DNA of 64,000 bases from IMG/VR virus record IMGVR_UViG_3300025012_000028, positions 62,001 through 126,000 of that record. The stretch is one strand, 5' to 3'. The translations under genes and the position numbers were made by a program. The notes beneath the pieces are model-generated. The model did not search any database. It was not told the DNA's origin and saw nothing but the letters and a program-made list of their open reading frames with translations. Within the stretch, counting starts at the first letter, position 1. Each line of letters opens with the position of its first letter. Below, in pieces: positions 867-58,948 of the stretch.

Positions 867-874
867 ATTTTCTC

Positions 875-911
875 TTGACTTTAATTTAAAATGGTGGTAA
901 TATTATTTATA
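875..911. promoter_or_regulatory. Sigma70 promoter (+) fused to T4 late promoter (-)
   Basis: TTGACT(875-880)-17 bp-TAATAT(898-903) with TG extension, directly followed by TATTTATA(904-911). Confidence 0.85.
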
Positions 912-6436: not shown

Positions 6437-6497
6437 TATTTATATTCTGAAATTATTTATATTTTGGGTTGACTTAATTCTGAAATGGTGGTAATAT
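6437..6497. promoter_or_regulatory. Two late promoters (-) back-to-back with a sigma70 promoter (+)
   Basis: TATTTATA 6437-6444 and 6454-6461; TTGACT(6469)-17 bp-TAATAT(6492). Confidence 0.85.
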
Positions 6498-6532
6498 TAT
6501 TTTGTAAACCAAATCCACTCTAGGAGGAAGTT

Positions 6533-6691
6533 ATGGCAAAGAAACTTGTTTATTGGAAACAACTTGATAATGGTAAATTTGTGATCGTGGATAAAAATGG
6601 TAGACATCTAACCACCGAGCAGGGTTTTAAAAATACTGTTATTGAACTGGCTAAAGTAAATCATCGTTGGGAACTTAAAGGAGAACTTTGA
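6533..6691 (+). CDS. Small early hypothetical protein (52 aa)
   Basis: AGGAGG RBS; MAKKLVYWKQ...; hand translated. Confidence 0.6.
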   Translation: MAKKLVYWKQLDNGKFVIVDKNGRHLTTEQGFKNTVIELAKVNHRWELKGEL

Positions 6692-7416: not shown

Positions 7417-7450
7417 TCATTTAGATTTTAAACCACACTAGGAGGAAGTT

Positions 7451-7702
7451 ATGATCGAAATCACCATTAACACCAAACAGCAATCTATACAGGTTCAATC
7501 TGCAATCGATGTCGCCACAATAGCACTAACGGATTATAATAAGTTTTCCGGCAAGGAAGAGGGAATTATCGAAACTGTTATGGGTTGGGCAGAGAAAAAT
7601 TTGGAAATGGCTAAAGCCGAACATCTGGACGTTTTCGAACGAGAGAAATATATCAACAAGGCAATTGCTTACGCAAACGTTCTGGAAATCTTAATTCAAT
7701 AG
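7451..7702 (+). CDS. Hypothetical protein
   Basis: AGGAGG RBS. Confidence 0.65.
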   Translation: MIEITINTKQQSIQVQSAIDVATIALTDYNKFSGKEEGIIETVMGWAEKNLEMAKAEHLDVFEREKYINKAIAYANVLEILIQ

Positions 7703-20436: not shown

Positions 20437-20646
20437 ATGGCATTTTCGAAAAGGGAATTTGGGTATGTGACAGTATGGACCGAAGATGTAGGTTCATTTG
20501 GAGTAGATAAACCTACTGTCGAAATTTCTTGGTCAAGTGTGGGGAGTGTATCTATTATGGGTGCCATTGAGTTTGCTGAAGACATGACCAAGGCAATTAG
20601 ATTCGCAGCATCAGAATCTAACAGACTTGGGATTGGGGTTAAATGA
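20437..20646 (+). CDS. Hypothetical protein
   Basis: AAGGAG RBS. Confidence 0.6.
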   Translation: MAFSKREFGYVTVWTEDVGSFGVDKPTVEISWSSVGSVSIMGAIEFAEDMTKAIRFAASESNRLGIGVK

Positions 20647-20735
20647 TATGAAACTCGAAATTGGAAATATGTATCTAACAGACTTGGGATTGGGGTTAAA
20701 TGATATGAAACTCGAAATTGGAAATATGTATCTAA
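20616..20735. repeat. Perfect 57-bp tandem duplication with ATCTAA microhomology
   Basis: 20616-20672 = 20673-20729; ATCTAA recurs at 20730. Confidence 0.95.
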
Positions 20736-24164: not shown

Positions 24165-26570
24165 CTAAATAGAGCGAACCGGAATACACCAGTTGGCGTT
24201 GAACTTTACTGACCTTGCATCAACCTCTCCATTTTTAAAACTGAAAACAAACCTAACCCGATTAAAATCACCATTTTTTAGTTCAGGATCATCACACCAA
24301 CAAAACATATCTAAGTTTAAGTTCCTGAGTTTATTTTTATGTTGATATAACATCTGACATTCTTTCACCGATGGTAATCTCCAATCAGTAAAACCACCGG
24401 CGTTAAAATTGAAACAGAAATTGTCTGCCTCTTCGAATGTATAATATTCATTTCTATATTCGTAGAAGTTGGCAAGTGTCATAATGTTTTCGATTGTCAC
24501 TACGGAATTTTCATCCTTACCTTCCAACGCATTGTTATTCTTTTCAATCACGTCTGTCACCAACATCAGTGGTGGTTTACTGTCTTCTTCGAAGAATATA
24601 ATTTCTTTCCTTGCCATTTGTTGTTTTGTGATTGCTTCTTTAAACAAACCCATCAGTTCCAAAAATTGGTCTGATGTCTCAAAAATTCTTCTGAAATAAC
24701 TCATCAGAACATCCCACATAGGATAGAATAACACATTCTTTGTAACTCTGTCCGAGAATTTCAATTCATCTAATACCATATAAATGTGGTTTTCCATATC
24801 AACGGGACGTTTCAATTCGGCCTCGTATAATTTAAAAAAGTGTTCCGTCACTATCGGCAAGATTTTTACCTGTGGATAAGATACTAAAGTTCCGATGGGA
24901 GATGGAAGTTTATTTAAATCTTTCACACCAAGAAGATATTGGTTCAATACTTTAGTCAGTTTTTTCCCTTCGGGAGAATCTGGTTGCATATTGACAAATA
25001 TTTTGTAAAATTCGTTGGGATCTTTAGTAATGAGTTCTGGTCCGATCTTATTATAATCTATTTTAGAAATTTTGGAATCATTATTATCCTGATAAATTTG
25101 TTTCGTGTTCAGACAGTAGATACCTTCCTTCTTGCCCTGTTTAGAATCCAACCATTGCTGAACAGTCTCTCTAAATCCTTCTATATGTCTTCCATAAACT
25201 GATTCAGAAACATAAAGGAATGTATCGTCGGGATTATCCTCATTGTAATATGGGATAATGAGGTAACGAGCAATTGGATCTTTTAGTGGATCTTTACTTG
25301 TTGGATTTTTTTGTAGACCATATTCTTCGTATAGTTTTGGATACTCTTTTTTAATATCAATTAATGGAAAAATAGATAAAAATTCGTCCTTAAAATAAGA
25401 TTTCCAATTTAATGTAATTTTTGTTTTAGCATCTTGGAGTCCTAATATTTCAAAAAATAAATTTTCTTTCATTGAATCACTAATTTTTCCTACTTCATTT
25501 ATTTTTTTATTGATTACATAAGCAACCAAACACCCCTCATTAATCTCGGTTGGTAGATAATGGCGGTTACTCCCATCTTCCAGATTCTTACAACTGTGCC
25601 ATTCTTTATCATACGATTGCCCTAATATATCATATGGGTGTCGGCTAATTACTACTTCATATTTGTCCGTGTTATCATCTGCGACTTTACCCCTGAAACG
25701 TTCATTGAATTTTTGAAGTAAATCAGATTCACCTTTAGACTGTAATAGTTTCCCGATGCGCATCTGTCTAGAAGAATTAGTAGCCTGAGCTAGACCAGCT
25801 TTCCAATCTACTATCTTATAATCAAATTCACTTAGCTTATCATCAATCTCAACATAAAGATCAGAACTTAAATCCTTATTAATCGGAAGGAACTTGCGCC
25901 ACTTACCATCGAACCATTCTTTATACCGATGTTTATAATCCTCAGAAATACTTTTCCACCATGTTCTACCATAGATGTCTTCATTTGCACCATCTATCAC
26001 TTTTCTATTTGAACCTTTCTTAATCGGCATGTGCATCGCATTACGGTAAGTAGAAAGTTTTATGGCTTCTAACATCAATTTATCACCAATACGATCAACT
26101 AATGGTATATTCCTTTCATCACACCACTCTTTAATTACTTTTGCGTCTTGGTGAATATGTATATGATCTATATTTGGTTTAAACATAATTTCTACAATAT
26201 AATCACTCAGGTTTTCGATACTGGTAGATAAAATTCGTTCTTCCATTTCATCAATTCTATCTTGAGCAGATTTAAACCCAAAATATTTAAAATCATGAAA
26301 AGGTACTATCTTATATTTGTGAGAAAGTTTATTACCATCCAGAGCAATTCTAATATCGGATGGTACACCAGTCCCATGAACTCTTCGATGAAAGTTTTTA
26401 TCTCTGGTTACGGATATTGATGCACCACTTAACACAGAATTATATGATAATAAATCAATTGATTTTAAACTATTATCTTCCAAAATTGATTTACCATTTA
26501 AAATGGTGGTAAAATGGTAAACAATTCCAACCTGTTTCGCTTCGTTGATATAATTTTTAAATGGGATCAT
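24165..26570 (-). CDS. Multidomain putative internal head protein: ART-like, central SRHPYD domain, C-terminal DUF1566/Lcl-like
   Basis: MIPFKNYINE|A; YHFT...SVTR...EMEERI; GGFTDWRLPS..E...PVR. Confidence 0.65.
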   Translation of the reverse strand: MIPFKNYINEAKQVGIVYHFTTILNGKSILEDNSLKSIDLLSYNSVLSGASISVTRDKNFHRRVHGTGVPSDIRIALDGNKLSHKYKIVPFHDFKYFGFKSAQDRIDEMEERILSTSIENLSDYIVEIMFKPNIDHIHIHQDAKVIKEWCDERNIPLVDRIGDKLMLEAIKLSTYRNAMHMPIKKGSNRKVIDGANEDIYGRTWWKSISEDYKHRYKEWFDGKWRKFLPINKDLSSDLYVEIDDKLSEFDYKIVDWKAGLAQATNSSRQMRIGKLLQSKGESDLLQKFNERFRGKVADDNTDKYEVVISRHPYDILGQSYDKEWHSCKNLEDGSNRHYLPTEINEGCLVAYVINKKINEVGKISDSMKENLFFEILGLQDAKTKITLNWKSYFKDEFLSIFPLIDIKKEYPKLYEEYGLQKNPTSKDPLKDPIARYLIIPYYNEDNPDDTFLYVSESVYGRHIEGFRETVQQWLDSKQGKKEGIYCLNTKQIYQDNNDSKISKIDYNKIGPELITKDPNEFYKIFVNMQPDSPEGKKLTKVLNQYLLGVKDLNKLPSPIGTLVSYPQVKILPIVTEHFFKLYEAELKRPVDMENHIYMVLDELKFSDRVTKNVLFYPMWDVLMSYFRRIFETSDQFLELMGLFKEAITKQQMARKEIIFFEEDSKPPLMLVTDVIEKNNNALEGKDENSVVTIENIMTLANFYEYRNEYYTFEEADNFCFNFNAGGFTDWRLPSVKECQMLYQHKNKLRNLNLDMFCWCDDPELKNGDFNRVRFVFSFKNGEVDARSVKFNANWCIPVRSI

Positions 26571-26578
26571 GATTTACC

Positions 26579-26615
26579 TTGACATTAAATTAGAGTTGTG
26601 GTAATATTATTTATA
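26579..26615. promoter_or_regulatory. Sigma70 promoter (+) fused to late promoter (-)
   Basis: TTGACA(26579)-17 bp-TAATAT(26602) then TATTTATA(26608-26615). Confidence 0.85.
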
Positions 26616-29194: not shown

Positions 29195-31205
29195 AATCTA
29201 ACCCCAGTAGTTAACGGAGAGTTGCTTTGAAGAGTCAAAGTGGTCGGGGGAAAAGAAGCAAAAGCACTATCTGCAAAAACCCCTAATGCTGAACCGCTAT
29301 GAGATTCAGTAGCCCAAGTAGCACTGCATTCGACCATTACATGATAAGTAGTTCCGGAAGTAACGCCGTAGTTACTAATAGTAACATCATTCCAGCCTAC
29401 TGTAGAGGTAAAAGCATTACCAGTAGAAAGCCTGGTAGAATCAGAAGTAGCTCCGTCATAAAGTGCAATTTCACAAGATGCAGAGTTTGTTACCATGTTA
29501 ACAGATAGTTTAGTAACATTCCCTGTTGCTCCTGCTACGATTGGAGAACCGGCAGTATGGGTAGCCCCCCAAGAATCGTTGGTGGTAAAACTACTAGAAG
29601 TCATAGCCGTGGGATAGTACCAAGCCCCACTAGCCGCTAAAGTTGTAGAGGTAAATGTATCGCTTACTCCACCAATAGTTATAACAGTATTTGTAGCCGT
29701 TGAATTACTGCTACTAGATGTATGTTGTGCTCTTACAGTATCTCCATTGGAAACTGAACCACTGCTAGTTACAAAACTGCCACTGCTGTTTATATCATAA
29801 GCCCCCCACTAACTGTTATTGTTGCAGGACTATTTACCCCTGCAACAGCTATACCTGTAGAGGTTATAAGAGTAGACAAAGCCACGTTCGTTTGATCTGT
29901 AAAGTTAAAAGCATCCGGAGTAGTATCTGTAGGTTCTTCAGGTTCCGAAGGGGTTTCAACCCAAATAGGATCTTGATTAGCCGTTACATAGTGGATACTA
30001 TTTAATGTCGTGATTTTTGCTACTGTTCCGGCAAGGAGTTTAATTCTAGTAGCGGTGTAGTTTTCAAAAGGAGTGGTGGATTTCATCACAGTAAAACCAC
30101 CACTAGTAGCAGCTACTAGGGCAATAGAATAATTTCCAAAAACACTAACTGTGCTTATTCCTTCTGTGTAGTCCTCAAAAGTTTGAGTAGAGGAAGAAGC
30201 CGGAATAAAAGCAAATCCGGATCGAATGAAAGCATCGGTGAAAGGAGTCGGAACTAAACCAGAGTTACTCACAAGAAGATTTATTTGATCCTGGATACTT
30301 GATGTTACTCCATTCAAATATCCAGCCTCAGTAGCACTAACGTTAGGGGGCCAGTCGGAGAGTTCAGAGAGAGAGGAAGCACCACCAGCACTAGAAGAAC
30401 CAATACGTCTACAATTGTTATCAGTCTCACAATAATTAATTGTGGTCATATTGTGAAAAATAACACCTTTAGATCTGGGTCCAGTATAAGGAACATTTCC
30501 ATTAGAAAAATCGCCCATATGTTCACCATTGGGAGTATTTGTTATAAACCCCTTACTAACTATTTCATTATCTTTGAGTGCAGAAGTCATGCGATCAAAA
30601 GCTATATTACCCGTTCCATCTGCTCCTGCTGGACCCTGTTCACCTTGAATTCCTTGTAAACCCTGTTCACCGGTATCACCTTTTAAACCTTGAATTCCTT
30701 GTAAACCCTGTTCACCTTGAATTCCTTGTAAACCCTGTTCACCTTGAATTCCTTGTAAACCCTGTTCACCGGTATCACCTTTTAAACCTTGAATTCCTTG
30801 TAAACCCTGTTCACCTTGAATTCCGGTTGCGCCAGCATTTCCGGTATCCCCCTTATCACCTTTAGGAATTCTAACATCGAAAATTGCTGCTGTCGGTGTA
30901 CCAACATTAGTAAACTGAGCATCACTACCCGCCGCACCAGTTGTCACACTTCCAACAGCGATTGTTGGTGTGGTTCCCGTTTGACCTTGATAATTATTCT
31001 GTATATAAGATAAAATTTGATTCATATTTATAGTATATGCTACACCCTTTCCATCCAATGAATTGTCTGAAGGTCTACCCATTGGCACTTTGTCGGTAGA
31101 TCTAAGTGGACCCACTACGAGTGGTGTATGGGAAATATCAGCAGCAAAAGCACCAATTGTTATTAACAAAAAGAAACTAACTATCACCCAACCTTCTTTT
31201 TTCAT
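29182..31205 (-). CDS. Signal-peptide collagen-repeat fibre/adhesin, split by a -1 frameshift at a G6 tract (29802-29807)
   Basis: GxQ collagen repeats; EAGYLNGVTSSIQ; DTTPDAF domain continues in the -1 frame into ORF 29182..29604. Confidence 0.75.
30633..30824 (-). repeat. Collagen-coding tandem repeats
   Basis: Repeated units encoding GEQGLQGIQ and GLKGDT. Confidence 0.9.
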
Positions 31206-32075: not shown

Positions 32076-32092
32076 TCCACATATTTTTCTTT

Positions 32093-32138
32093 TATTTATG
32101 ATAATTTTGTTGACTTTAAAAGAGAATGGTGGTAAGAT
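32093..32138. promoter_or_regulatory. Variant late promoter (-) back-to-back with sigma70 promoter (+)
   Basis: CATAAATA (minus, 32093-32100); TTGACT(32110)-17 bp-TAAGAT(32133). Confidence 0.75.
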
Positions 32139-32180
32139 ATTTTAAATTCGAACCAAATAACTAATTAAGAAGGAGTATAA

Positions 32181-47549: not shown

Positions 47550-47582
47550 AAAACCCTCTAAGATTTCTCTTAGAGGGGTTTT
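47550..47582. terminator. Bidirectional intrinsic terminator
   Basis: AAAACCCTCTAAGA...TCTTAGAGGGGTTTT. Confidence 0.85.
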
Positions 47583-47601
47583 CTATATTAAAAATCCTTT
47601 T

Positions 47602-47707
47602 TATAAATAAAAGAAACGGATAAGTTCAGTTGTTGACGCAACCGAACAACAGGAAGGGGAAACCCGCTGTCTCCGTTCACTTCTATTTATATAAGGGGAA
47701 TCTGATG
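47602..47707. ncRNA. Structured endonuclease leader, copy 1 (putative cis-RNA)
   Basis: Near-identical to 52331-52436; folds as three-way junction; late boxes at both ends. Confidence 0.6.
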
Positions 47708-48802
47708 AACAAACCAGAAGTTGTTGAAGTCAAAGCCTACCATATTGTCTACCTCACCACAAATCCTTTTAACAATAAAATCTATGTTGGTAAACATTCA
47801 ACCAACAATCTTAACGATGGGTATAAAGGTTCTGGTAAATATTTAAATAAAGCTTTTAAGAAATATGGAAAGAAACATTTTAAATTCCAAATTCTTCATT
47901 ACTGTCTTACTTTGATGGATGCTTATGAAGTTGAGGGGTGGATTGTAGATCAAGCTTTTATTGATAGACCAGATACTTACAATGTGGTCGTTGGTGGAAG
48001 AATGACCCCAGATTGGACAGGAAAGAAACGATCTGAAGAATGTATAGCTAAACATAAAATGTATAGAGCAACAGAAGAAACAAAGAAATTAATCAGTATT
48101 GCAAATACTGGAAAAATTAAAACTCCAGAACAACTTGAATTAATGAGAACATTATCGACTGGAAGGAAAGATTCGGAAGAGACAAAACAGAAAAAGAGGT
48201 TGGCAAACTTAGGAAGGAAACATACCGAAGAAGCATTAAGAAAAATGAGAGGAAGGAAATTAACAAAAGAACACATTAATAAATTAACCGGAAGAAAACG
48301 TACAGAAGAGACATTATTAAAATTAAAATGTAGAGTTGTAAAACCAGAATCAATTTTACAAGGAGTTCAGACTAGAAGTAATTATTTCCCAAAACTTTTA
48401 TTAATTTCTCCTACTGGTGAAACTCATATAATACAATATTCCCTTCAAACTTTCTGTAGAACGCACAATCTTTCTTATACGACCATTTTTACAAATTTAA
48501 ATAAAGGACCAATTAAGTTTTATTACAATAGTAAAAGTGAAAAATATATCAATTCAATTGGGTGGGAACTAAGAGACGATTCATTTTCACAATCAAATAT
48601 AAAATTACCAAAAGAATATTTGATCATATCCCCAGATGGAAAAGAACATAAATGTAATTATATTTCTTCATTTTGTCGGCAACATAATCTATCCAACCAT
48701 ATTTTATCGAGACATATAGACAAGGGAATTATATCATGTAGAAACGGGAAATCTAAAGAGTATATGAACAATAAAGGTTGGGAGATACGAAGTATAAAAT
48801 AA
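47705..48802 (+). mobile_element. GIY-YIG homing endonuclease with NUMOD3-like repeats
   Basis: IVYLTTN...IYVGKH...YKGSG; repeated G(R/K)K.(S/T)EE; start at MNKP after AAGGGG RBS. Confidence 0.92.
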
Positions 48803-50170: not shown

Positions 50171-52303
50171 TTATGACAAGTAGCAACTAAAATTAAAAGT
50201 TTCCGTTCCTTCGATCTTTGAGAAATAAAGTATAATTACACTATTCATGATCGTTCTTCCATCCGTGGTTATGATATCCAAATCCACATCACCATTATCG
50301 GAAGGGAGAACATAATTCTCATTGGCTAGAGATAAATCATATTTATTTAGAATGTTTTTAATTTCATCCAACGGCAACTGAGGAAGTGGTTGAGCTATGA
50401 TTTGTTTCAGTTCCTCGTTGGCATTGACTCTATCAAATGAAAGAAGTCTAGCAGTTTTCTTTTCGGGACGCTCGACCAGATTGTTTGAATCCAATTCGGG
50501 TTCTGGTTCCTCTTCTGGAATTAATTCTTCGGGTTCCACATCAACAGGTTCTTCTAATGATTCATCTTCCATTGGTGGTTCTTCACTGAAAGCACCTTCT
50601 AACATTATATTAAAAACATTAACATTTGATATTTCTTTACTATTTTCAATAAGATTTATATTTTTCCAAGCTTTGAAATTATCCCATTCTGGAAGAATAC
50701 CAGCACATATCATAGCAAGTTTATTTCCATATGCTCTTGCTTGATCTGAATAATCAAATGCAGTATTGGAAGTATATATAATTAATTGTGAATCTTTCCA
50801 CACTTTACAATCATACATCCCCCCGTCAACTTTAAAAACAGATACTTTAAATCCTTTGGGACATTTTACTTTTATATCTTGTTTATGGTCTTCTGTCTCA
50901 CATAAAGCACCTTCCAAAAGTTTCCCAAATAAATTCTTACTCTCAAATTTAAATTTGAGTTGTTCTGATTCATTATCTTTCATGTAGGTCAAAGAATCAG
51001 GAAGAGGATGAACAAATTTAAAATCGTGTGGGAAAGATTCTAAAAAGAATTCAATGTATGCAAACAAATCTGAATTATCTTCTTTAAAAGCTTCTAAATC
51101 TTCTTTAGTCCAATTGGAAAAAGCAGTATGATAGTCTTCGGTGTGTTGAAAAGATTGTTCATCTGGTTCTGAATCCGATTCCATCTCAATCCAATACATC
51201 CATTTGTCCTGCAATTGATCATAAAAATCATACACCGATTCCTTGGCTTCTTTTTCATGCCAAGCTTTATCTTCATCTTCAGTCGGCCACCAAGGATCTA
51301 AAAACATATCAACAAAACTTGGCATTCTATCGTCGGCCCAATTATCGTGGTGGTGGTATTTATGATTACGGGTGAAACTATATTTAAAAATATCAAACCC
51401 TTCTTTAATCACGCGATCCCAATGATTGATTTGCCATTCTTCTTCAATATTATAATCCTCATATTCATCCTCATCTCTGGGACGATTCAGATAATCATCT
51501 TCATTCTCCCAATTCTCATCCAACATTCTATGTGCTGCTGCTTCTTCATCAAAGATAAACTTTAGCGGAGTTCTTTCTTTTATCTTTCCATAATTTTTGG
51601 TGAAGTTAGGCAAATCTTCGATGATACTATATGGTTTGTTGTCGCTGCGATCATTATAATCCCTACTTTCTTGGATTTCGCCATTCTTAATATAAATCTG
51701 GTATTTTTCGAATGGATCATCCACATTGATGAACTGAAGAAGATCACCACTTCTGCTATATGCTCTCCAATGTGAATCGGTGTTTAGATATGCAGTACAC
51801 CAGTTTGCTTGCGGATTGGTCTTATATTGAGCACCTTTAATATTCCCTTCTTGTGTTAGGGTTTCAATACAAATCCATTCATCGGTAACATCAATGACTG
51901 TGATATCATCTGGCATATTGAAGATATCTTTTTCTTTTTTCTTCTTCTGCCTGTTGGATTCAGTTTCTTCTAATGTATCAACATAAGCAAAGAACTCTCT
52001 CCAAGTTTTGAATGAAGTGAAAGAGACACCTTTAGATAGGCGATGGAATTTTTCAAGATCATCTTTGATAGTTTCATGTTCAGCGACATGATGAAGGTCT
52101 AATTCTTTATCTCTCTTTATGAGATTGATAATACCTTCAAGATATTTACCACGCTGACCATTCTTTGAGGTAGGGTCTTGTGCTGCTAGATCATTGAATA
52201 CATCGAGAGGGATAAGTTTATGATCGACATATGAATCATAAAATTTTTGTAATGAAATCTCGATTAAAAATTGTTCTTCTAATATTTTGTGTAAAATTGA
52301 CAT
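50171..52303 (-). CDS. Large putative internal head polyprotein with WCT domain
   Basis: MSILHKILEEQFLIE; DPT....GKY; NWCTA; internal LLE|G, LIE|N, MLE|G; late promoter 52327-52334. Confidence 0.6.
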   Translation of the reverse strand: MSILHKILEEQFLIEISLQKFYDSYVDHKLIPLDVFNDLAAQDPTSKNGQRGKYLEGIINLIKRDKELDLHHVAEHETIKDDLEKFHRLSKGVSFTSFKTWREFFAYVDTLEETESNRQKKKKEKDIFNMPDDITVIDVTDEWICIETLTQEGNIKGAQYKTNPQANWCTAYLNTDSHWRAYSRSGDLLQFINVDDPFEKYQIYIKNGEIQESRDYNDRSDNKPYSIIEDLPNFTKNYGKIKERTPLKFIFDEEAAAHRMLDENWENEDDYLNRPRDEDEYEDYNIEEEWQINHWDRVIKEGFDIFKYSFTRNHKYHHHDNWADDRMPSFVDMFLDPWWPTEDEDKAWHEKEAKESVYDFYDQLQDKWMYWIEMESDSEPDEQSFQHTEDYHTAFSNWTKEDLEAFKEDNSDLFAYIEFFLESFPHDFKFVHPLPDSLTYMKDNESEQLKFKFESKNLFGKLLEGALCETEDHKQDIKVKCPKGFKVSVFKVDGGMYDCKVWKDSQLIIYTSNTAFDYSDQARAYGNKLAMICAGILPEWDNFKAWKNINLIENSKEISNVNVFNIMLEGAFSEEPPMEDESLEEPVDVEPEELIPEEEPEPELDSNNLVERPEKKTARLLSFDRVNANEELKQIIAQPLPQLPLDEIKNILNKYDLSLANENYVLPSDNGDVDLDIITTDGRTIMNSVIILYFSKIEGTETFNFSCYLS

Positions 52304-52330
52304 ATTTTACCTCTATTATTTTTCTTTATT

Positions 52331-52436
52331 TATAAATAAAAGAAACGGATAAGTTCATTGCCTCGGAAACAATGAACAACAGGAAGGGGAAACCCGCTGT
52401 CTCCGTTCACTTCTATTTATACAAGGGGAAGTCATG
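52331..52436. ncRNA. Structured endonuclease leader, copy 2 (putative cis-RNA)
   Basis: Near-identical to 47602-47707 except the P2 hairpin interior and bases around the RBS. Confidence 0.6.
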
Positions 52437-53504
52437 TCAAAACAAAAACTCACAAATGAAATTGTAGATTTTAGATTGAAAAATAGGAATATAATTAGGC
52501 TTGATGATTATATTAATGCCAGAACTAAAATTAGATTCCAATGTACCATTGACGGTTATATTTGGAATGCAAAATCTGATAGCATATTTCAGGGAAACGG
52601 ATGCCCCGAATGTGCGGGTCTAGCCAAGCTAAACAACAAAATTATAGATGATCGATTAATTAAAAGAAATATTCTTAGAAAGGGAGAATATATAAATAAC
52701 AAAACCATAATTCCATTTCAATGTTTGATTGATGATTATATATGGGATGCTAGTCCAGATTACATTCTTAATGGTAATGGGCGTTGTCCAAAGTGTTCGG
52801 GTAATATTCCAGTAACTAATGATTCTTTGGATGTAAAATTAGAAGGAAGAAATATAAAAAGACTTGGAGATGTAAATGGTCTGACGACTAAAATTTCATT
52901 TCAGTGTTTGATTGATAATCACATTTGGGATACATTACCATCCATTATTTTAGCAGGACATGGATGTTTGGTGTGTTCGGGCAAAAAACCAATTTCAAAC
53001 GAACTTATAGATTTGAGATTAGAAGGAAGAAATATAAGAAGACTTGATGATGTTATTAATGACATCACAAAAATACAGTTTCAATGTACCACAAAAACTT
53101 GTAATCATATTTGGTTCACTACCCCTAATAAAATTACAAGTGGTGCTGGATGCCCGATGTGTAAGAAGAAAAATGAGAAAAGAATTTTAGAATATCTTAT
53201 CGAAAAATATGAGCATGAAAATATAGAACCACAATTTTATATTTTTGCTAATGATAGAAAATATTATATCGATTTTGAAATTAATGGAATTTTAATTGAG
53301 TATCATGGCAAACAGCATTACGAGCCAGTGCGCTTTGGTGGACGTAGTGAAGAGAAAACAAAAGAAGCATTCATCAAACAAGTTAAACGCGACTACGAAG
53401 TTAGAGAATATTGTAGAGAGCACAATATAAGACTGATTGAAATCCCATATTGGCTCTCCCACAAAGAACAATATAAGTTATTGGAAGAATTATTTATAAT
53501 TTAA
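52434..53504 (+). mobile_element. Endonuclease with four Zn-ribbon repeats and C-terminal PD-(D/E)XK/Vsr-like domain (Hef-like)
   Basis: 4x FQC...W.......G..CxxC; IDF...IEYHGKQHY...D...LIEIPY. Confidence 0.85.
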
Positions 53505-53965: not shown

Positions 53966-56479
53966 TTAAAAGAATTCGGATAGGTCAACTCTGGTTTCCG
54001 TATCATACCCGATGGTAGAGAAAATCTTTTCTAACGGTGCCATGAAAGTTTTCTGGAACATAACCGGATAATCTATTTCAAATTTAGGTAGCAACTCTTT
54101 GGGCATTTTCTCTAGACACCCAACAATATCACTTTGAATATAGTTCGGTTTCTTGATATAAGCGAACTTAATCTTATCACCATTTTCAATAACCGGATAC
54201 TTCTTTTCCAATTTAAAATCTTTCAGTGCCTTATTGTAGATCAGTGCAGCACGGACCTGAATGGGAATTCCTTTACCCCCCAATGTATGAAGAACAGTTG
54301 ATGTTGTACCAGTTTGTTTATCTCTTCTGTTCCCATAAAGGTTGATACCCCTTGGCATACCAACTTCTTCGAAAGACATCTTATAAAACTCTTTCCTGAA
54401 CTGTTCGATAAAATCAATCAGGATTTTGTTGTCGCCGGTCTGGAAAATTAGATTTAATGTTTCCCTGATCTTTTCCCTGACAACATAAGGTGTGGAAGTT
54501 CTAACAACCTCAATCCCTTTGATTTTCATCTTGGGTTTATCCAGATACCATTTACCATCACAGTAAATCTGACTCATGCAGTATTTTTTCTTCTCGACAA
54601 AGATAACTGCATTACTCAGTCCCTCAAATTCCATTTCCAGACTGAAAGCAAACATGTTGAGGTTTTTATTAAGTTTATCAAAGAAGGTGTTGATGGTTGG
54701 TTCAATCACCTTGTCGTGATATTTAATTAAGAATTTAGCAACTGTCTCTTTGTCCGGTTCCTTTTCACCAAAACGTTTTGTCACGATACCATTAAGATTT
54801 ATGAAAATGGAATCTGTATCCTGATAATCCCATTCAATATCCTGAACATGTTTCATGAGATAAGTTGCAGCACCCCTAGCACACAACTGTCCTTGCCAAG
54901 TAATAGCTGTTGCAATACGGATATCATAATACCTGAAGTGGTGGGACGCCATTGCACCATAGATACTGTTCAGGAAGATCTTCAGGGTGTACTGAAGGTT
55001 GTCCAGAACACTCATCATGGCTTTATCAATGTTGGGATCTTTCATTAGCTTCTTGGTGGCAATACGGCGCTGGAACAACCTACTAACAATCTTCGGAATG
55101 AATCCCTGTTTCTTCTTTGAGAAGAAATGACCATTGGAAGTATAAGTGACATTATGCTTTCTTAATACTTCCGAAATCTGTTCCAGAGAATCTATATCCA
55201 GACACTTCACAACTCCGGTATAAGTTTCTCTAATTTGTTTCAGTTCATCATTTACTTCAGATTCAGACAGAACTGTTTCGGGTGACATATTTGAACCGCA
55301 GATCTGGTTAGGATAGCTGGAAATGATATCATCAACCGATACCCATTTCCTAAAACCTCTTATAGGTTCTTTGACATACCCACCTTCAAAATCCTCTTTA
55401 TGAGATGTTTTGTTGGGAGGACAGAGAATATTTTCCTTGAGCAATTCACAGTAAATAAGCGAATCCCAAGGTTTGGTTGTACCAAAAATATTCTGAGGTT
55501 CACACTTCGCCATGTAAAAGTACATAATGGCGTTGTCGATATACTTTAATTTTTCATCCAGAAGATAGATAAGCTGACAGTCACGAATGTTATATTCCAT
55601 AAACAACTGAAAGTTTTTGTTGTACAAACCTTCTAGAGTATCATATTCTTCTTTATAAGAAGTTTTTTCTTCTCCCAATTCAAATTGAGAAATGAAGTTA
55701 AGGGAATAAGATTCGCGCAAATCTTTGGTGAATTTTTTATATAGAGTCTGGTAATCCCAAGATATGATACCTTCAATGCGGTAAACAGTTTGCATCTTCT
55801 TGTTTACCATCTTTTCGGAACGGACAATTTTCTTTATTGGAGAAAGTTTATTTGCTTCATCTTCCCCCAGAATCTTTTTAATTCGGTTGTAGGTATACCC
55901 AACATCATAACCATCAATGTTCCATCCGGTTATAATATCGATATCCTGTCTGACAAAGAAATCAACAATACTTCTTAATAAATGTGTCTCGTCTTTACAT
56001 TTGAAGTATCTAATATTATCGGCAAAGGGAGTGAAACCTTCCGCATAGGCGAACACATAAAATATGTTAGTATTCATATTTTGGAATGTGATAGAGCGGA
56101 TTGGTTCGGGGGTTTCTTCGGTATCCAAGCTGAACGCTTCTATATCAAAATCATAAATGTTAAATTTAGATTTTCTTACTTCAATTTCATCTGGGTAATT
56201 TTCTCCAATGAACGCAATGGGATATTGAATGTCACCATAGATATCCAACAAGCCACTGTTCTCTTTCTTCCACTTGCTTGCTTCAGACATGTTGGGGAAC
56301 TGAAGTACCTTTAAATTGTTCCCTGCTAGGTCTTTCCAGCCAGTTTCTTCTTTGACCATATACCCAAGGGTGGGTTCATAGTTTGTTGCCTCAAAATGGC
56401 GGGTTCCGTCCGGTGAAATGTATTTGTGGTAGATTTTGTTTTGGTGGTAATAGGCATTGATCAAACTGTTTCCCGACAT
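53966..56479 (-). CDS. gp43: Family B DNA polymerase (gp43-like)
   Basis: FDIE, GWN...YD, YNIRD exo motifs; DIISSYP, KIFLNSIYG, YQDTDS, KKKY, KGIE..R.STP. Confidence 0.97.
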   Translation of the reverse strand: MSGNSLINAYYHQNKIYHKYISPDGTRHFEATNYEPTLGYMVKEETGWKDLAGNNLKVLQFPNMSEASKWKKENSGLLDIYGDIQYPIAFIGENYPDEIEVRKSKFNIYDFDIEAFSLDTEETPEPIRSITFQNMNTNIFYVFAYAEGFTPFADNIRYFKCKDETHLLRSIVDFFVRQDIDIITGWNIDGYDVGYTYNRIKKILGEDEANKLSPIKKIVRSEKMVNKKMQTVYRIEGIISWDYQTLYKKFTKDLRESYSLNFISQFELGEEKTSYKEEYDTLEGLYNKNFQLFMEYNIRDCQLIYLLDEKLKYIDNAIMYFYMAKCEPQNIFGTTKPWDSLIYCELLKENILCPPNKTSHKEDFEGGYVKEPIRGFRKWVSVDDIISSYPNQICGSNMSPETVLSESEVNDELKQIRETYTGVVKCLDIDSLEQISEVLRKHNVTYTSNGHFFSKKKQGFIPKIVSRLFQRRIATKKLMKDPNIDKAMMSVLDNLQYTLKIFLNSIYGAMASHHFRYYDIRIATAITWQGQLCARGAATYLMKHVQDIEWDYQDTDSIFINLNGIVTKRFGEKEPDKETVAKFLIKYHDKVIEPTINTFFDKLNKNLNMFAFSLEMEFEGLSNAVIFVEKKKYCMSQIYCDGKWYLDKPKMKIKGIEVVRTSTPYVVREKIRETLNLIFQTGDNKILIDFIEQFRKEFYKMSFEEVGMPRGINLYGNRRDKQTGTTSTVLHTLGGKGIPIQVRAALIYNKALKDFKLEKKYPVIENGDKIKFAYIKKPNYIQSDIVGCLEKMPKELLPKFEIDYPVMFQKTFMAPLEKIFSTIGYDTETRVDLSEFF

Positions 56480-56488
56480 TAACGCTCC

Positions 56489-56674
56489 TTATCTTTCGTA
56501 CCAGCTTTGAATTCTCACAGCACTTATATTTACACGGCGATCATCGAAGTCTTTTCCATCCCATTCTAGGTTATTTTCCATAGCGTTAACCCAACAATAA
56601 AAATCATAATCTTCATCTTCTGGTATGATATACCAATGACCATCATTGTCCGAAATAATTCTTTGTGATTTCAA
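56489..56674 (-). CDS. Small hypothetical protein (DNDGHWY)
   Basis: AAGGAG RBS; TTG start. Confidence 0.6.
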   Translation of the reverse strand: MKSQRIISDNDGHWYIIPEDEDYDFYCWVNAMENNLEWDGKDFDDRRVNISAVRIQSWYER

Positions 56675-56692
56675 AAAATATTCTCCTTAAAT

Positions 56693-56725
56693 AAAAAATG
56701 GCTACTCGATTTCAGTAGCCATTTT
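56693..56725 (-). terminator. Intrinsic terminator
   Basis: AAAATGGCTACT...AGTAGCCATTTT. Confidence 0.75.
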
Positions 56726-56749
56726 CTCATGGTTATTCAGTTTTGTCTA

Positions 56750-56941
56750 TTATTTTTCTCGGAGGGTTTCCTTGAAAGAGTCGATCAGTTTCCTGCGACT
56801 ATCAGATACATTTTCTATTATCTCCCAACAAAGTGGACACAACCAAAGCCTATAACGGGCCAACCACAAAACTGTGCTTTCTTTCTCACATTCATCACAA
56901 ATACATGCATGTGGGCGACTTAAATTGCGTGGTGTACGCAT
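56750..56941 (-). CDS. Small Zn-finger protein
   Basis: CDEC...CPLC. Confidence 0.6.
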   Translation of the reverse strand: MRTPRNLSRPHACICDECEKESTVLWLARYRLWLCPLCWEIIENVSDSRRKLIDSFKETLREK

Positions 56942-56952
56942 AAATTATCCTT

Positions 56953-57393
56953 TTATTTCCTGAGTTCCATCACCCGTTTTTCCAACCACGAAACATATGA
57001 TTCACCGGCTACTCGACTGGTGGTATATTCTTCATACAGTTCATTTTTAGTTTCCGAGTCGATTGAGAAGTAATGAATAACTTCATCATTCCAATCAAAC
57101 CAGACATCTTCCTTTTTATTTTTGGGATAACAATTTGTTTCGTACACCTTCAGGCAAGGCTCACCATTTTTATCGTAGTAGTTTGGCTGATAGAACTCCA
57201 TGTTGTAATCTTCATATTTAGAAAAGTCACACGTCAAACAGATACAATCATGGTCAGTGTGGTTTTTATTGAGAGAAATGGTTGCTCGACAACCTTCATC
57301 GAACATTGTTTCCAGATTTTCAATCCTCTTTTTGAACGTCACTTCAAAGGTGTTGCATTTATCAAAATCCTTCAGTAGCTCTCTGAAATTCAT
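56953..57393 (-). CDS. Early hypothetical protein
   Basis: AGGAGG RBS; promoter TTGACA(57456)-16 bp-TATTAT(57434). Confidence 0.65.
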   Translation of the reverse strand: MNFRELLKDFDKCNTFEVTFKKRIENLETMFDEGCRATISLNKNHTDHDCICLTCDFSKYEDYNMEFYQPNYYDKNGEPCLKVYETNCYPKNKKEDVWFDWNDEVIHYFSIDSETKNELYEEYTTSRVAGESYVSWLEKRVMELRK

Positions 57394-57457
57394 AAATCCT
57401 CCTTGAGAAATTAATTTAAGATAGAAACATAATACCAGTTTAAATTAATTTGTCAAT

Positions 57458-57483
57458 AAAAAAGACACCTTCGGGTGTCTTTT
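57458..57483 (-). terminator. Intrinsic terminator
   Basis: AAAGACACC-TTCG-GGTGTCTTT. Confidence 0.85.
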
Positions 57484-57485
57484 CT

Positions 57486-57779
57486 TTAAACCCTTATCGT
57501 GTAGGTTTCTTGCCGTCCGGTAATTCCGTCTATACGGATTTCTTCCAACCCTTCCGCAACAAATCGGGTAGGTTCGATGCGTTTCCACAACATCACTTTT
57601 CCTCGCCATTCGAATCCTAAATTTGTTCCACCAATTTCATCATTCATATTTTTGATGATAATTGCATCGAATTTAAGGTAAGTGCGCCCACCTTCAAATT
57701 CAACCGGATCTTCTAATGGAGAAACACCTTCAAACTTTTTACCAGACAAAAATGCTAATGCCCTTTCAGACAACGACAT
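57486..57779 (-). CDS. Hypothetical protein
   Basis: Abuts dsbA stop. Confidence 0.55.
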   Translation of the reverse strand: MSLSERALAFLSGKKFEGVSPLEDPVEFEGGRTYLKFDAIIIKNMNDEIGGTNLGFEWRGKVMLWKRIEPTRFVAEGLEEIRIDGITGRQETYTIRV

Positions 57780-57780
57780 C

Positions 57781-58035
57781 TCAGACACATTTCTCTCCTG
57801 TGAGCACGTCAACAAGCTGATCGGTTTCGTTAATCTCTTCCAGAAACTTGGTCCGATCCTTCTGCCACTTGAAATACTGCTTCAGTGCATCGTTCAGGGG
57901 CTTTTTCTTGATGTCATGTTCTTTGCAGAATTCATCTTTCACATCCTTGATGTCGGCCATGATATCTTTGCGCTTATCATCAAGTTCCTTAATACAAGTT
58001 GCGAGTGCTACGATCTGTTCCTGAGTGTAATCCAA
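57781..58035 (-). CDS. dsbA: dsDNA-binding protein (T4 DsbA/GapR-like)
   Basis: IKE....K.I..DIKDVKD...E..I..K.LN pattern; 84 aa. Confidence 0.7.
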   Translation of the reverse strand: MDYTQEQIVALATCIKELDDKRKDIMADIKDVKDEFCKEHDIKKKPLNDALKQYFKWQKDRTKFLEEINETDQLVDVLTGEKCV

Positions 58036-58036
58036 T

Positions 58037-58567
58037 TTACTTCTCCTTCGTGAATTTAGATTTGTTTGCGGTCATGGCATCGTAAAGCCCTACCAGATTG
58101 TAATTGGAATTGCGTTTCTGAACCTTGGCAACCCAATAGGAAATGTTGTCACAATTAGTTTTGTCCCGTTCCAGTTCCTCTTTTCTCAGTTGAATCTTTT
58201 TCTCTTTGAGAGCTTCACCATCACGAAGAATATTTTCCCCTTTGTGATGGTTGTAATATTTTATCCCTTTTTCCATAGTGTAAAACGATACAGTTACAGG
58301 AAGGTTAAACCCTTTGTAGTACCGGTGGCAACGCTCATAGAAAATTGCATATTGATTATAGAGACTTTGAGGAATCAGAATGGTACGCACACCACTTGCT
58401 CTACCTTCAGCAATTATCATCGCTTTATTCTTGGTTGCAACATCTTCATCATCACAAAGGGAAAACCCAATAAGAATATTGTTATCAACACCAACAATAT
58501 TTGCTACCAGATACCCCTTGAATTCACCGTCCCTGATAATCCTTTGCCGCAGCTTGTTTTCGTTCAT
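58037..58567 (-). CDS. Hypothetical protein
   Basis: AAGGAG RBS; IGFSLC...D...K.KA..IA..R. Confidence 0.65.
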   Translation of the reverse strand: MNENKLRQRIIRDGEFKGYLVANIVGVDNNILIGFSLCDDEDVATKNKAMIIAEGRASGVRTILIPQSLYNQYAIFYERCHRYYKGFNLPVTVSFYTMEKGIKYYNHHKGENILRDGEALKEKKIQLRKEELERDKTNCDNISYWVAKVQKRNSNYNLVGLYDAMTANKSKFTKEK

Positions 58568-58645
58568 TGCTAATCTCCTTTTTGGTTGTAGGTTTCATAA
58601 AATTCTTTCGCTCGTAATTCATTATGCCGCTTGACTTTATAAAAG

Positions 58646-58948
58646 TCAAATATTATTTTCCACCATTGCAGCTTTGATGTATTCGATATAATCATTTTCG
58701 AATTGGTCGTGGGTCCAGTTCTGACATTCTTCCAACCCTCTGAGATAATTTCTAACCTGCATCCCTTCACGAAAATGAACAGGGTGTGGAATAAAAGATA
58801 TGCCACCTTTTAAATGTAAATTACATTTCACCTTCATGACTGGATCGACATCACCCTTATACAGTTTAGCGAGAGTACGGAAGAAATGTCTTCCCTCTTT
58901 ACCTAACCATTTATGGAGTTTGGAAACTATAATTGGATCTAACTTCAT
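58646..58948 (-). CDS. Hypothetical protein (PHPVHFREGMQVRN)
   Basis: ATGA overlap with upstream small ORF. Confidence 0.65.
   Translation of the reverse strand: MKLDPIIVSKLHKWLGKEGRHFFRTLAKLYKGDVDPVMKVKCNLHLKGGISFIPHPVHFREGMQVRNYLRGLEECQNWTHDQFENDYIEYIKAAMVENNI

What the first reader, a model, noticed from the sequence alone, without database searches (positions are those of the whole stretch)
47550..47700. Endonuclease leader bracketed by convergent late promoters; possible antisense sRNA and RBS occlusion
Seen: each copy has TATAAATA on + at its 5' end and on - at its 3' end (47684-47691; 52414-52421). In copy 1 a minus transcript would reach the bidirectional terminator at 47550-47582, giving a roughly 130-nt antisense RNA, and the P2 A-C mismatch becomes G-U on that strand. 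In a read-through plus transcript, TCCTTT (47595-47600) plus TATAAATA can pair with TATTTATA-T-AAGGGG and mask the RBS; a transcript started at the late promoter lacks that arm. Established: T4 silences I-TevI, e and soc on early transcripts with RBS-sequestering hairpins. The pairing is weaker in copy 2.
Basis: partly seen in the sequence, partly recalled or inferred. Interest (0 to 1): 0.6.

Follow-up and report, generated by a model that had tools for sequence, protein, structure and literature searches.

The report
Structured leader RNA of phage endonucleases
The two "convergent late promoters" are the two arms of an RNA stem closing a conserved three-helix leader that precedes dozens of homing-endonuclease genes in T4-like environmental phages; it is a new, more elaborate form of the known "silent until late" hairpin, and the proposed antisense RNA is not supported.

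Summary
The sequence observation is correct. TATAAATA lies on + at 47602-47609 and 52331-52338, and on - at 47684-47691 and 52414-52421. A bidirectional terminator lies at 47554-47577.

The two copies belong to a larger family. It has 5 copies in this 214.5-kb T4-like phage, 16 in a related 213-kb phage, and about 50 members on at least 25 viral contigs. Almost every member sits directly upstream of a homing-endonuclease gene.

The architecture is: late promoter (5' arm of stem P0), P1, UAAG, P2, AAC, P3, CUGUCC, P1', 3' arm of P0 (TATTTAT-), SD, ATG. Covariation is strong. G-U outnumbers A-C 43 to 17, so the sense RNA is the folded strand.

Among members not selected through the 3' arm, only 13 of 31 have an exact minus-strand TATAAATA. 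It is therefore a by-product of the stem, and a conserved antisense sRNA is not supported.

RBS masking in read-through transcripts is supported by folding. Predicted SD accessibility in copy 1 is 0.05 in the long transcript and 0.49 in the late one. Family means are 0.34 and 0.51. The TCCTTT extension is specific to copy 1.

One unexpected feature is that the P3 loop repeats each gene's own SD plus 3' flank, about 40 nt upstream of the real one. This is statistically robust and unexplained. The motif is not in Rfam 15. No RNA data exist for this locus.

The parts
47554..47577 (.). Bidirectional intrinsic terminator between the upstream 122-aa gene (+) and the endonuclease cassette. It is probably pre-existing and not part of the leader family.
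   Evidence: 10-bp stem, 4-nt loop and T-tails on both strands. It is absent upstream of copy 2 and of the other members.
47595..47601 (+). Pyrimidine stretch UCCUUUU. In a read-through transcript it extends stem P0 over the SD. Specific to copy 1.
   Evidence: MFE fold of 47583-47720. SD unpaired probability 0.05. Not conserved in the family.
47602..47613 (+). Late promoter TATAAATA, which is also the 5' arm of stem P0, followed by A and AAG (P0b).
   Evidence: promoter usage in the genome. P0 pairing and covariation.
47615..47677 (+). Three-way junction. P1 is AACGGA 47615-47620 with UCCGUU 47672-47677. J1/2 UAA is 47621-47623. The P2 hairpin is 47624-47647. P3 is 47649-47670. J3/1 C is 47671. 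The inferred late transcript start (about 47615) coincides with the first base of P1.
   Evidence: Folds. CM hits. All P1 and P2 pairs show double compensatory changes.
47654..47661 (+). RBS mimic AAGGGGAA inside P3, an exact copy of the real SD region 39 nt downstream.
47680..47691 (+). CUU-C-UAUUUAUA, the 3' arm of P0. Read on the minus strand it is TATAAATA (47691 to 47684).
   Evidence: Exact minus-strand consensus in only 13 of 31 unbiased relatives.
47693..47707 (+). Real ribosome-binding site AAGGGGAA (47693-47700) and start codon ATG (47705-47707).
   Evidence: The homologue on L029 starts at the same ATG.
47705..48802 (+). GIY-YIG/NUMOD3 homing endonuclease gene (365 aa).
   Evidence: phrog_314 at E = 7.6e-45 and Pfam NUMOD3.
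52331..52433 (+). Copy 2 of the leader. TATAAATA is 52331-52338. P1 is 52344-52349 with 52402-52407. P2 is 52353-52377. P3 is 52379-52400. The mimic is 52384-52391. The P0 3' arm TATTTATA is 52414-52421. The SD region is 52423-52430.
52434..53504 (+). Zinc-ribbon-repeat endonuclease gene (DUF4379/CapR; 356 aa).
   Evidence: phrog_559 at E = 1.3e-55 and Pfam DUF4379 and CapR.
52327..52334 (-). Minus-strand TATAAATA, 24 nt upstream of the divergent 710-aa gene (start 52303). It overlaps the plus-strand promoter in the palindrome TTATTTATAAATAA.

Best explanation
Both copies are members of a conserved, multi-copy, structured 5'-leader RNA that travels with homing-endonuclease gene (HEG) cassettes in T4-like phages.

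In the sense RNA an outer stem (P0) closes a three-way junction of P1, P2 and P3. The 5' arm of P0 is the transcript of the late promoter TATAAATA. The 3' arm of P0 is its complement (TATTTAT-), ending 0-7 nt before the Shine-Dalgarno sequence. The minus-strand TATAAATA is simply that complement.

Any transcript entering from upstream contains both arms. It folds P0 and, in copy 1, an extension over the SD, and it is poorly translated. A transcript started at the late promoter begins at about the first base of P1, lacks the 5' arm and leaves the RBS open. This is the T4 I-TevI/e/soc/segB/mobE principle, packaged as a portable module that insulates the endonuclease gene wherever the cassette lands.

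The junction persists at the 5' end of the late mRNA. Its P3 loop displays a copy of the gene's own SD region. I infer that this is a non-initiating ribosome-binding site acting as a standby site, decoy or stabiliser.

Shown: the family, the helices, the strand, and the non-conservation of the antisense promoter. Inferred: the position of the late start, differential translation, and the role of the mimic.
For: Family membership:
- Five copies in the genome and a homologue on L029.
- More than 40 further members on IMG/VR contigs, including 16 in one 213-kb phage.
- Of 41 downstream ORFs, 25 match phrog_314 and 13 match phrog_655, both annotated as homing endonuclease families; others are HNH or Zn-ribbon nucleases.

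Structure:
- 92.9% of cells are paired against 69% in shuffles. 26 of 31 pairs change on both sides. The covariation score is 0.562 against 0.164 (0 of 500 shuffles reach it), and slid controls give 0.05-0.08.
- G-U 43 against A-C 17.

Promoter:
- 30 of 69 TATAAATA lie within 60 nt upstream of same-strand starts, nearly all 17-54 nt away.
- The 5' octamer is (T/G/A)ATAAATA in nearly all members found without requiring it.

RBS access:
- Family means 0.34 (long), 0.51 (late) and 0.44 (shuffled), with p = 1e-4 and 6e-3. Copy 1 gives 0.05 against 0.49.
- Fold z-scores of -4.3 and -2.8.

Other support:
- A second T4-like phage has simple SD-sequestering hairpins with GATAAATA in the 5' arm or the loop before its HEGs.
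- The precedent is documented in PMC2988022.
- Mimic: self LCS 7.2 against cross 4.9, 0 of 20000 permutations. Spacing 39.6 +/- 3.4 nt.
Against: - No transcript data exist: no RNA run holds the locus. The late start site is assumed from T4 rules.
- P0 itself stops short of the SD in most members, and the SD-covering extension is not conserved. The accessibility difference is therefore moderate and partly follows trivially from P0 abutting the SD window.
- At least 10 members, including copy 2, have a divergent gene upstream, where read-through sense transcripts are not expected.
- A plain hairpin would suffice for masking. The model does not explain why a conserved junction with invariant UAAG and CUGUCC, or an RBS mimic, is kept.
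- The alignment used for covariation was fitted to the model, and many members were found with patterns that fix some motifs.
Confidence: 0.6

Rival explanations
1. One reading: the minus-strand TATAAATA is a working late promoter. In copy 1 it makes a roughly 130-nt cis-antisense sRNA ending at the bidirectional terminator, and this RNA regulates the endonuclease mRNA.
For: - An exact consensus octamer is present in copies 1, 2 and 3.
- T4-type late promoters need little more than this octamer (established knowledge).
- A strong terminator is correctly placed in copy 1.
- The hypothetical RNA folds well, at -52 kcal/mol with z = -7.2.
- Such an RNA would carry the complement of the RBS mimic in a loop, so it could pair with the real RBS.
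Against: - The exact octamer is present in only 13 of 31 members not selected through the 3' arm. It is present in 3 of 5 copies in this genome and 5 of 16 in G002.
- The RBS mimic is kept equally in members without the octamer.
- The G-U/A-C asymmetry favours the sense strand.
- Only copy 1 has a terminator. In copy 2 the transcript would run into the 710-aa gene, which has its own promoter 24 nt upstream of its start.
- No RNA data exist.
Confidence: 0.1
2. The three-way junction is the functional core and acts in the late mRNA. It would be a ribosome- or protein-binding (or ligand-sensing) leader that sets translation or stability of endonuclease mRNAs. The P3 loop would act as a non-initiating SD, like STAB-SD, or as a decoy or standby site. 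P0 and promoter overlap would be secondary.
For: - Invariant junction nucleotides (UAAG, AAC, CUGUCC) sit amid freely covarying stems.
- The junction sits at the very 5' end of the inferred late transcript.
- The mimic includes the SD and 3-6 flanking nt, followed 6-11 nt later by CUG, UUG or AUG, so it resembles a whole initiation region.
- The mimic is predicted to be about 57% unpaired.
- J3/1 plus the P1 3' arm is the best local complement of the real RBS, at -6.0 kcal/mol within a 12-nt window. This allows an alternative SD-sequestering pairing if P1 opens.
Against: - No known ligand or protein is implicated.
- There is no Rfam match.
- RegA and RegB homologues were not detected in this genome, although that search had no positive control.
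- Binding of 30S subunits does not require identity of the flanking nucleotides.
- There is no conserved uORF: frames split 12/10/9 and stops are scattered.
Confidence: 0.3
3. A DNA-level element: a repeated promoter cassette, the late-promoter counterpart of PeSL/PmSL modules, whose inverted and direct repeats mainly serve recombination and shuffling of endonuclease cassettes. RNA folding would be incidental.
For: - It is multi-copy, with 5-16 copies per genome.
- The same leader precedes unrelated nuclease families.
- The left boundary of homology between copy 1 and L029 lies at the promoter, with different upstream genes.
- PeSL modules are documented in T4-like phages and are present in this window.
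Against: - Copies within one genome have diverged in sequence while keeping pairing through compensatory changes. That is the signature of selection on a folded strand, not of recombination homology.
- The G-U excess is strand-specific.
- Conserved unpaired junction bases and the RBS mimic have no obvious role in DNA.
Confidence: 0.12

Closest known systems
T4-type late-promoter-embedded, RBS-sequestering hairpins (I-TevI, I-TevII, I-TevIII, segB, Aeh1 mobE; also T4 e, soc, 25, 26, 39)
   Same: A late promoter lies immediately upstream of a late or endonuclease gene. A stem forms only on longer early or middle transcripts, and late transcripts lack its 5' arm so the RBS is free (PMC2988022). 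The gene class (GIY-YIG and HNH HEGs) and the phage group are the same.
   Different: Here the promoter octamer itself is the 5' arm. The 'loop' is a conserved 65-75-nt three-way junction that stays on the late mRNA. The stem usually ends just before the SD rather than covering it. The element is a sequence family with up to 16 copies per genome. It also carries an RBS mimic.
seg43(25) hairpin of Aeromonas phage 25
   Same: A very stable predicted hairpin sits immediately upstream of, but does not include, the RBS of a free-standing seg-like endonuclease (PMC2988022).
   Different: That is a single simple hairpin with no reported family, junction or mimic. I did not compare the sequences.
PeSL / PmSL composite promoter-stem-loop cassettes of T4-like phages
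   Same: Repeated intergenic modules combining a promoter, a stem-loop, and the SD and start of the downstream gene. They are associated with variable or mobile genes (PMC4122927).
   Different: PeSLs use early sigma-70-like or middle promoters with a simple terminator-like stem upstream of the promoter. Here the promoter is late, the structure lies downstream within the transcript, and it is conserved by covariation.
STAB-SD and ribosome standby sites (own knowledge: Agaisse and Lereclus 1996; de Smit and van Duin 2003)
   Same: An SD-like sequence in a 5' leader that is not followed by a used start codon and could bind 30S subunits.
   Different: In the known cases the element is a generic SD. 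Here it copies the individual gene's SD plus flank and sits in a hairpin loop of a conserved junction. No stability or binding data exist.
cis-antisense sRNAs from convergent promoters
   Same: In three copies of this genome the octamer on the minus strand matches the late-promoter consensus.
   Different: The octamer is not conserved across the family, the strand asymmetry favours the sense RNA, and a terminator is present at only one copy.

Membership tests
T4-type late-promoter / RBS-sequestering hairpin | Late promoter (TATAAATA) directly upstream of the regulated gene | tested here: met
   47602-47609 and 52331-52338. Genome-wide positional use of the octamer is shown.
T4-type late-promoter / RBS-sequestering hairpin | The 5' arm of the stem lies at or upstream of the late start, so late transcripts cannot form it | tested here: met
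   The 5' arm is the promoter octamer plus AAG. The start, inferred from the T4 rule of about 6 nt downstream, falls at the first base of P1. The start site itself is not measured.
T4-type late-promoter / RBS-sequestering hairpin | The 3' arm contains the SD and/or start codon | tested here: inconclusive
   Copy 1 meets this through the UCCUUUU extension (SD unpaired 0.05). Copy 2 meets it weakly (0.21). Across the family P0 ends 0-7 nt before the SD and the extension is not conserved. Means are 0.34 against 0.51.
T4-type late-promoter / RBS-sequestering hairpin | Early or middle read-through transcripts cover the region | tested here: inconclusive
   Copy 1 lies behind a terminator. Copy 2 lies behind a divergent gene. 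Copy 3 lies 2 nt after a same-strand gene. Contexts are mixed across the family. No RNA data exist.
T4-type late-promoter / RBS-sequestering hairpin | Translation is lower from long than from late transcripts | not testable with these tools
   Needs reporter or toeprint assays.
cis-antisense sRNA from a minus-strand late promoter | A promoter on the minus strand conserved among homologous elements | tested here: not met
   An exact TATAAATA is present in 13 of 31 members not ascertained through the 3' arm.
cis-antisense sRNA from a minus-strand late promoter | A defined 3' end (terminator) | tested here: not met
   Present only at copy 1. Other members have no terminator upstream of the element.
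cis-antisense sRNA from a minus-strand late promoter | Structure is selected on the antisense strand | tested here: not met
   G-U 43 against A-C 17 in paired cells on the sense strand.
Any Rfam 15 family | Score at or above the family's gathering threshold | tested here: not met
   No hit in the whole window or in 11 member loci. Sub-threshold hits are driven by the terminator.
PeSL/PmSL cassettes | Early sigma-70-like or middle promoter with a stem-loop upstream of it | tested here: not met
   The promoter is the late octamer, and the structure lies downstream within the transcript.
PeSL/PmSL cassettes | Repeated many times per genome next to variable or mobile genes | tested here: met
   5 copies here, 16 in G002, always before HEG-type ORFs.
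STAB-SD / standby site | An SD-like sequence in the leader without a used start codon | tested here: met
   The mimic sits in the P3 loop. No conserved ORF follows.
STAB-SD / standby site | 30S binding and an effect on stability or translation | not testable with these tools
   Needs biochemistry.

The most novel reading that the evidence does not exclude
A previously undescribed class of cis-regulatory leader RNA, specific to homing-endonuclease cassettes of T4-like phages. A three-way junction presents, in a hairpin loop, an exact copy of the gene's own ribosome-binding sequence (SD plus flank plus a pseudo-start) about 40 nt upstream of the real one. The two copies co-evolve, which implies a self-mimicry mechanism: a ribosome decoy or standby site, or competition for one shared partner. 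This mechanism would set when and how much endonuclease is made, independently of the promoter-arm stem.
Probability: 0.4. Interest if true: 0.8.

Novelty: new variant of a known kind. Interest (0 to 1): 0.62.

Why it matters
Homing endonucleases must be expressed late and sparingly so that they spread without harming the phage. The known controls were worked out one gene at a time in T4.

Here the control element is itself a portable, conserved RNA module shared by unrelated nuclease families and present in up to 16 copies per genome. That makes three things testable:
- how mobile genes carry their own insulation;
- why a junction is needed where a hairpin would do;
- what an RBS that mimics itself achieves.

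Practically, a covariance model of this leader marks endonuclease cassettes and late promoters in uncultured T4-like phage genomes. It also corrects gene starts: public gene calls begin the endonuclease inside the leader.

Tried and rejected
- **Rfam.** Gathering and permissive thresholds gave nothing beyond terminator-driven noise.
- **BLAST.** BLASTN of the leader and of a second member against 50,697 phage records found no match.
- **Exact core patterns.** Exact 20-22-mers of the P3 core in IMG/VR gave none.
- **JGI metagenome pattern.** It returned only the phage's own contig plus 5 chance matches, none scored by the model.
- **Prokaryote genome pattern.** There was one true hit, a phage-sized contig binned in a Caulobacterales MAG. 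The other 29 were chance.
- **Protein relatives in IMG/VR.** GIY-YIG relatives were all distant and lacked the motif. The DNA-polymerase search returned nothing.
- **Model R2 on named phages.** No hit in T4, Melnitz-3, S-H38, RHph_I1_18 or Mosig. The same model hit 5 of 5 environmental records.
- **Leader peptide from the conserved NUG of CUGUC.** Rejected. Frames relative to the real ATG split 12/10/9, stops are scattered, and 26 of 31 start with CUG.
- **A cis partner complementary to the shared RBS/mimic sequence.** None found within 2.5 kb in this genome.
- **RegB or RegA involvement.** No homologue was detected here, but the searches had no positive control.
- **Hammerhead or another known ribozyme.** The junction strands (UAA, A, C/GUC) lack the catalytic core, and Rfam ribozyme models do not match.
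- **Expression data.** Only 4 DNA runs from one groundwater study hold the locus and none is RNA.
- **16S resemblance.** Copy 1's P3 resembles 16S helix 45 (GGGGAACCUGC). I judged this coincidental, because P3 loops differ between members and follow each gene's own SD.

Full report
**1. What is at the coordinates**

The window is bases 62001-126000 of a 214.5-kb IMG/VR virus record from groundwater.
- Its family-B DNA polymerase is about 35% identical to those of cyano-, pelagi- and rhizobio-myophages, so it is a deep-branching T4-like phage.
- At 47705-48802 lies a GIY-YIG/NUMOD3 homing endonuclease gene.
- At 52434-53504 lies an unrelated zinc-ribbon-repeat (DUF4379/CapR) endonuclease gene.
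- Both are preceded by an almost identical leader of about 95 nt.

**2. TATAAATA is a real late promoter here**

Of 69 occurrences in the genome, 30 lie within 60 nt upstream of a same-strand ATG, nearly all of them 17-54 nt away, and most are intergenic. The endonuclease leaders are exceptional in placing it 96-105 nt upstream, with a folded segment in between.

**3. The fold**

Between the promoter octamer and its complement the RNA folds as a three-way junction.
- P1 is AACGGA paired with UCCGUU.
- J1/2 is UAA.
- P2 is a hairpin that differs between the copies by compensatory changes.
- P3 is ACAG-GAA-GGG-GAAA-CCC-G-CUGU.
- J3/1 is C.
- The octamer plus AAG pairs with CUU-C-UAUUUAUA to form an outer stem, P0.
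- In copy 1, UCCUUUU just upstream extends P0 over the SD.
- Long-transcript folds are far more stable than shuffles: z = -4.3 for copy 1 and -2.8 for copy 2.

**4. It is a family**

A covariance model built from the two copies found three more copies in the same genome.
- One is at G000:60721-60819(-), just outside the window.
- The others start near 12886(-) and 157589(+).
- Each sits before another endonuclease-type ORF.

A 72%-identical homologue of the GIY-YIG gene on an ENA groundwater contig (L029) carries the same leader.
- It has three double compensatory or mismatch-repairing changes in P2 and a G-U in P3.
- Its upstream gene is different, so the cassette boundary lies at the promoter.

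Structure-guided patterns plus the model recovered more members from IMG/VR. Whole-record searches found 16 copies in one complete 213-kb phage whose polymerase is 43-46% identical to this one, and 3 each in two others.
- In all there are about 50 distinct members on at least 25 contigs.
- Of 41 downstream ORFs, 25 match phrog_314 and 13 match phrog_655, both homing endonuclease families; others are HNH or Zn-ribbon nucleases.
- No Rfam family matches.
- Phage isolates including T4 lack the motif.
- Literature searches found no description of it.

**5. The helices are selected, on the sense strand**

I used a 30-member alignment.
- 92.9% of cells form pairs, against 69% after shuffling.
- 26 of 31 pairs change on both sides.
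- The covariation score is 0.562 against 0.164 (0 of 500 shuffles reach it).
- Sliding the partners by 1-3 columns gives 0.05-0.08.
- Every pair of P1 and P2 shows double changes.
- The caveat is that the alignment is fitted to the model.

G-U pairs (43) far outnumber A-C mismatches (17), and in P3 the counts are 32 against 7. On the opposite strand those G-U pairs would be C-A mismatches, so the folded molecule is the sense RNA.

**6. The minus-strand 'promoter' is the complement of the stem arm**

I took the 31 members that were not found through a pattern fixing the 3' arm.
- The arm reads TATTTATA in only 13.
- The rest read TATTTATC (7), TATTTATG (4), TATTTATT (3), a truncated TATTTA(A/G) (3), or are degenerate (1).
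- P0 still pairs at 7.3 of 8 positions on average.
- Two members with a changed first promoter base have the compensating change opposite: GATAAATA with TATTTATC, and AATAAATA with TATTTATT.
- In this genome, copies 4 and 5 read GATAAATA on the minus strand.
- Only copy 1 has a terminator positioned to end a minus-strand RNA.

A conserved antisense sRNA is therefore not supported. An incidental minus-strand transcript at copies 1-3 cannot be excluded, because no RNA run holds this locus.

**7. RBS masking**

I used partition-function folding on 31 members.
- Mean unpaired probability of the SD window is 0.34 in transcripts that include 40 nt upstream.
- It is 0.51 in transcripts starting 6 nt after the octamer.
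- It is 0.44 when the 5' part is shuffled.
- Wilcoxon tests give p = 1e-4 (long against late) and 6e-3 (long against shuffled).
- Copy 1 gives 0.05 against 0.49, and copy 2 gives 0.21 against 0.51.

Part of this effect follows simply from P0 ending 0-7 nt before the SD.

A second T4-like phage from the same kind of sample has plain hairpins before its endonuclease genes. One is a perfect 16-bp stem over the SD with GATAAATA in the loop. This is the classical arrangement reviewed for I-TevI, I-TevII, I-TevIII, segB and Aeh1 mobE (PMC2988022).

The T4-like logic is thus the best available explanation for P0. It is inferred, not shown.

Contexts are mixed. At least 8 members follow a same-strand ORF and at least 10 follow a divergent one. 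This fits a portable insulator better than a response to one particular upstream operon.

**8. An unexpected feature: an RBS mimic**

In every member the P3 loop repeats the gene's own SD plus 3-6 nt of its 3' flank.
- Shared strings include AAGGGGAA (copies 1 and 2), AGGAGATT (copy 3), GGAGCTAT, GGAGTTAG, TTCGGAGAAC, GGAGAAACCG and ATAGGATAGTATA.
- The longest common substring between P3 and the member's own RBS averages 7.2 nt. Against other members' RBSs it averages 4.9 nt. No permutation out of 20000 reached the observed sum (n = 47).
- The two copies lie 39.6 +/- 3.4 nt apart.
- The mimic is followed 6-11 nt later by the conserved CUG, UUG or AUG of CUGUCC, so it resembles a whole initiation region.
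- No reading frame or stop is conserved after it.
- No complementary partner occurs in cis.
- The mimic is present whether or not the minus-strand octamer is intact, which excludes the antisense RNA as its rationale.
- The segment just 3' of P3 (UGUCC plus the P1 3' arm) is the best local complement of the real RBS. An alternative SD-sequestering pairing is therefore possible if P1 opens.

My working inference, at low confidence, is that the mimic is a non-initiating ribosome-binding site: a standby site, a decoy or a STAB-SD-like stabiliser. Why the flanks must match remains unexplained.

**9. Verdict**

- The pair of octamers is one stem of a sense-strand leader RNA.
- That leader is a new, elaborate, multi-copy variant of the known late-promoter/RBS-masking device of phage endonuclease genes.
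- The 'convergent promoter/antisense sRNA' reading is not supported by comparative evidence.
- What deserves follow-up is the conserved junction and its self-mimicking RBS.

**Limits**
- There are no transcript data.
- The late start site is assumed from T4.
- Several members were found with patterns that fix parts of the motif.
- Members within one genome are not independent.
- Covariance-model E-values are rough.

Noticed in passing
window 857-908, 6451-6502, 26561-26612, 32092-32143 (and 1351-1388, 2630-2667, 6512-6549, 7430-7467): Repeated modules with a TTGAC-N17-TGGTAATAT early-promoter-like sequence, and repeated SD/ATG junctions. They resemble the PeSL cassettes described for T4-like phages.
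   Followed up: no
window 30624-30866: A repeat with 9-nt periodicity. On the reverse strand it encodes Gly-x-y collagen-like triplets, probably within a fibre protein gene.
   Followed up: no
window 20616-20729: A perfect 57-bp tandem duplication.
   Followed up: no
window 52326-52339: The palindrome TTATTTATAAATAA gives back-to-back late promoters. The minus-strand one lies 24 nt upstream of the 710-aa gene of unknown function (50171-52303).
   Followed up: partly
window 47630-47704: Public gene calls start the GIY-YIG endonuclease at TTG 47630 (390 aa; 387 aa in the homologue), which is inside the leader RNA. ATG 47705 with its SD is the likelier start.
   Followed up: partly
G002 (IMGVR_UViG_3300002895_000002) 54835-58665: The DNA polymerase gene of the related 213-kb phage is split between residues 479 and 488 by about 1.36 kb. 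This may be an inserted mobile element.
   Followed up: no
L052:9911-14206: Another T4-like phage carries an endonuclease gene between the gp44 and gp62 clamp-loader homologues, and a TnpB (OrfB_IS605/Cas12f-like) gene next to regA. Its endonuclease leaders are simple hairpins with GATAAATA.
   Followed up: partly
L280:5961-6057: A family member identical to that of L121 lies on a 141,847-nt contig binned as an uncultured Caulobacterales MAG. It is probably a phage genome in a bin, and gives a weak host hint.
   Followed up: no
L233, L246, L247, L253: A group sharing the GGTAAG...CTGTCCC core but lacking a TATAAATA 5' arm and an obvious downstream ORF. It may be a promoter-less or decayed relative of the leader.
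   Followed up: no
window 47658-47674 and 52388-52404, minus strand: The complement of P3 scores as a weak terminator-like hairpin on the minus strand in both copies. It would lie 20-35 nt into any transcript from the minus-strand octamer.
   Followed up: no
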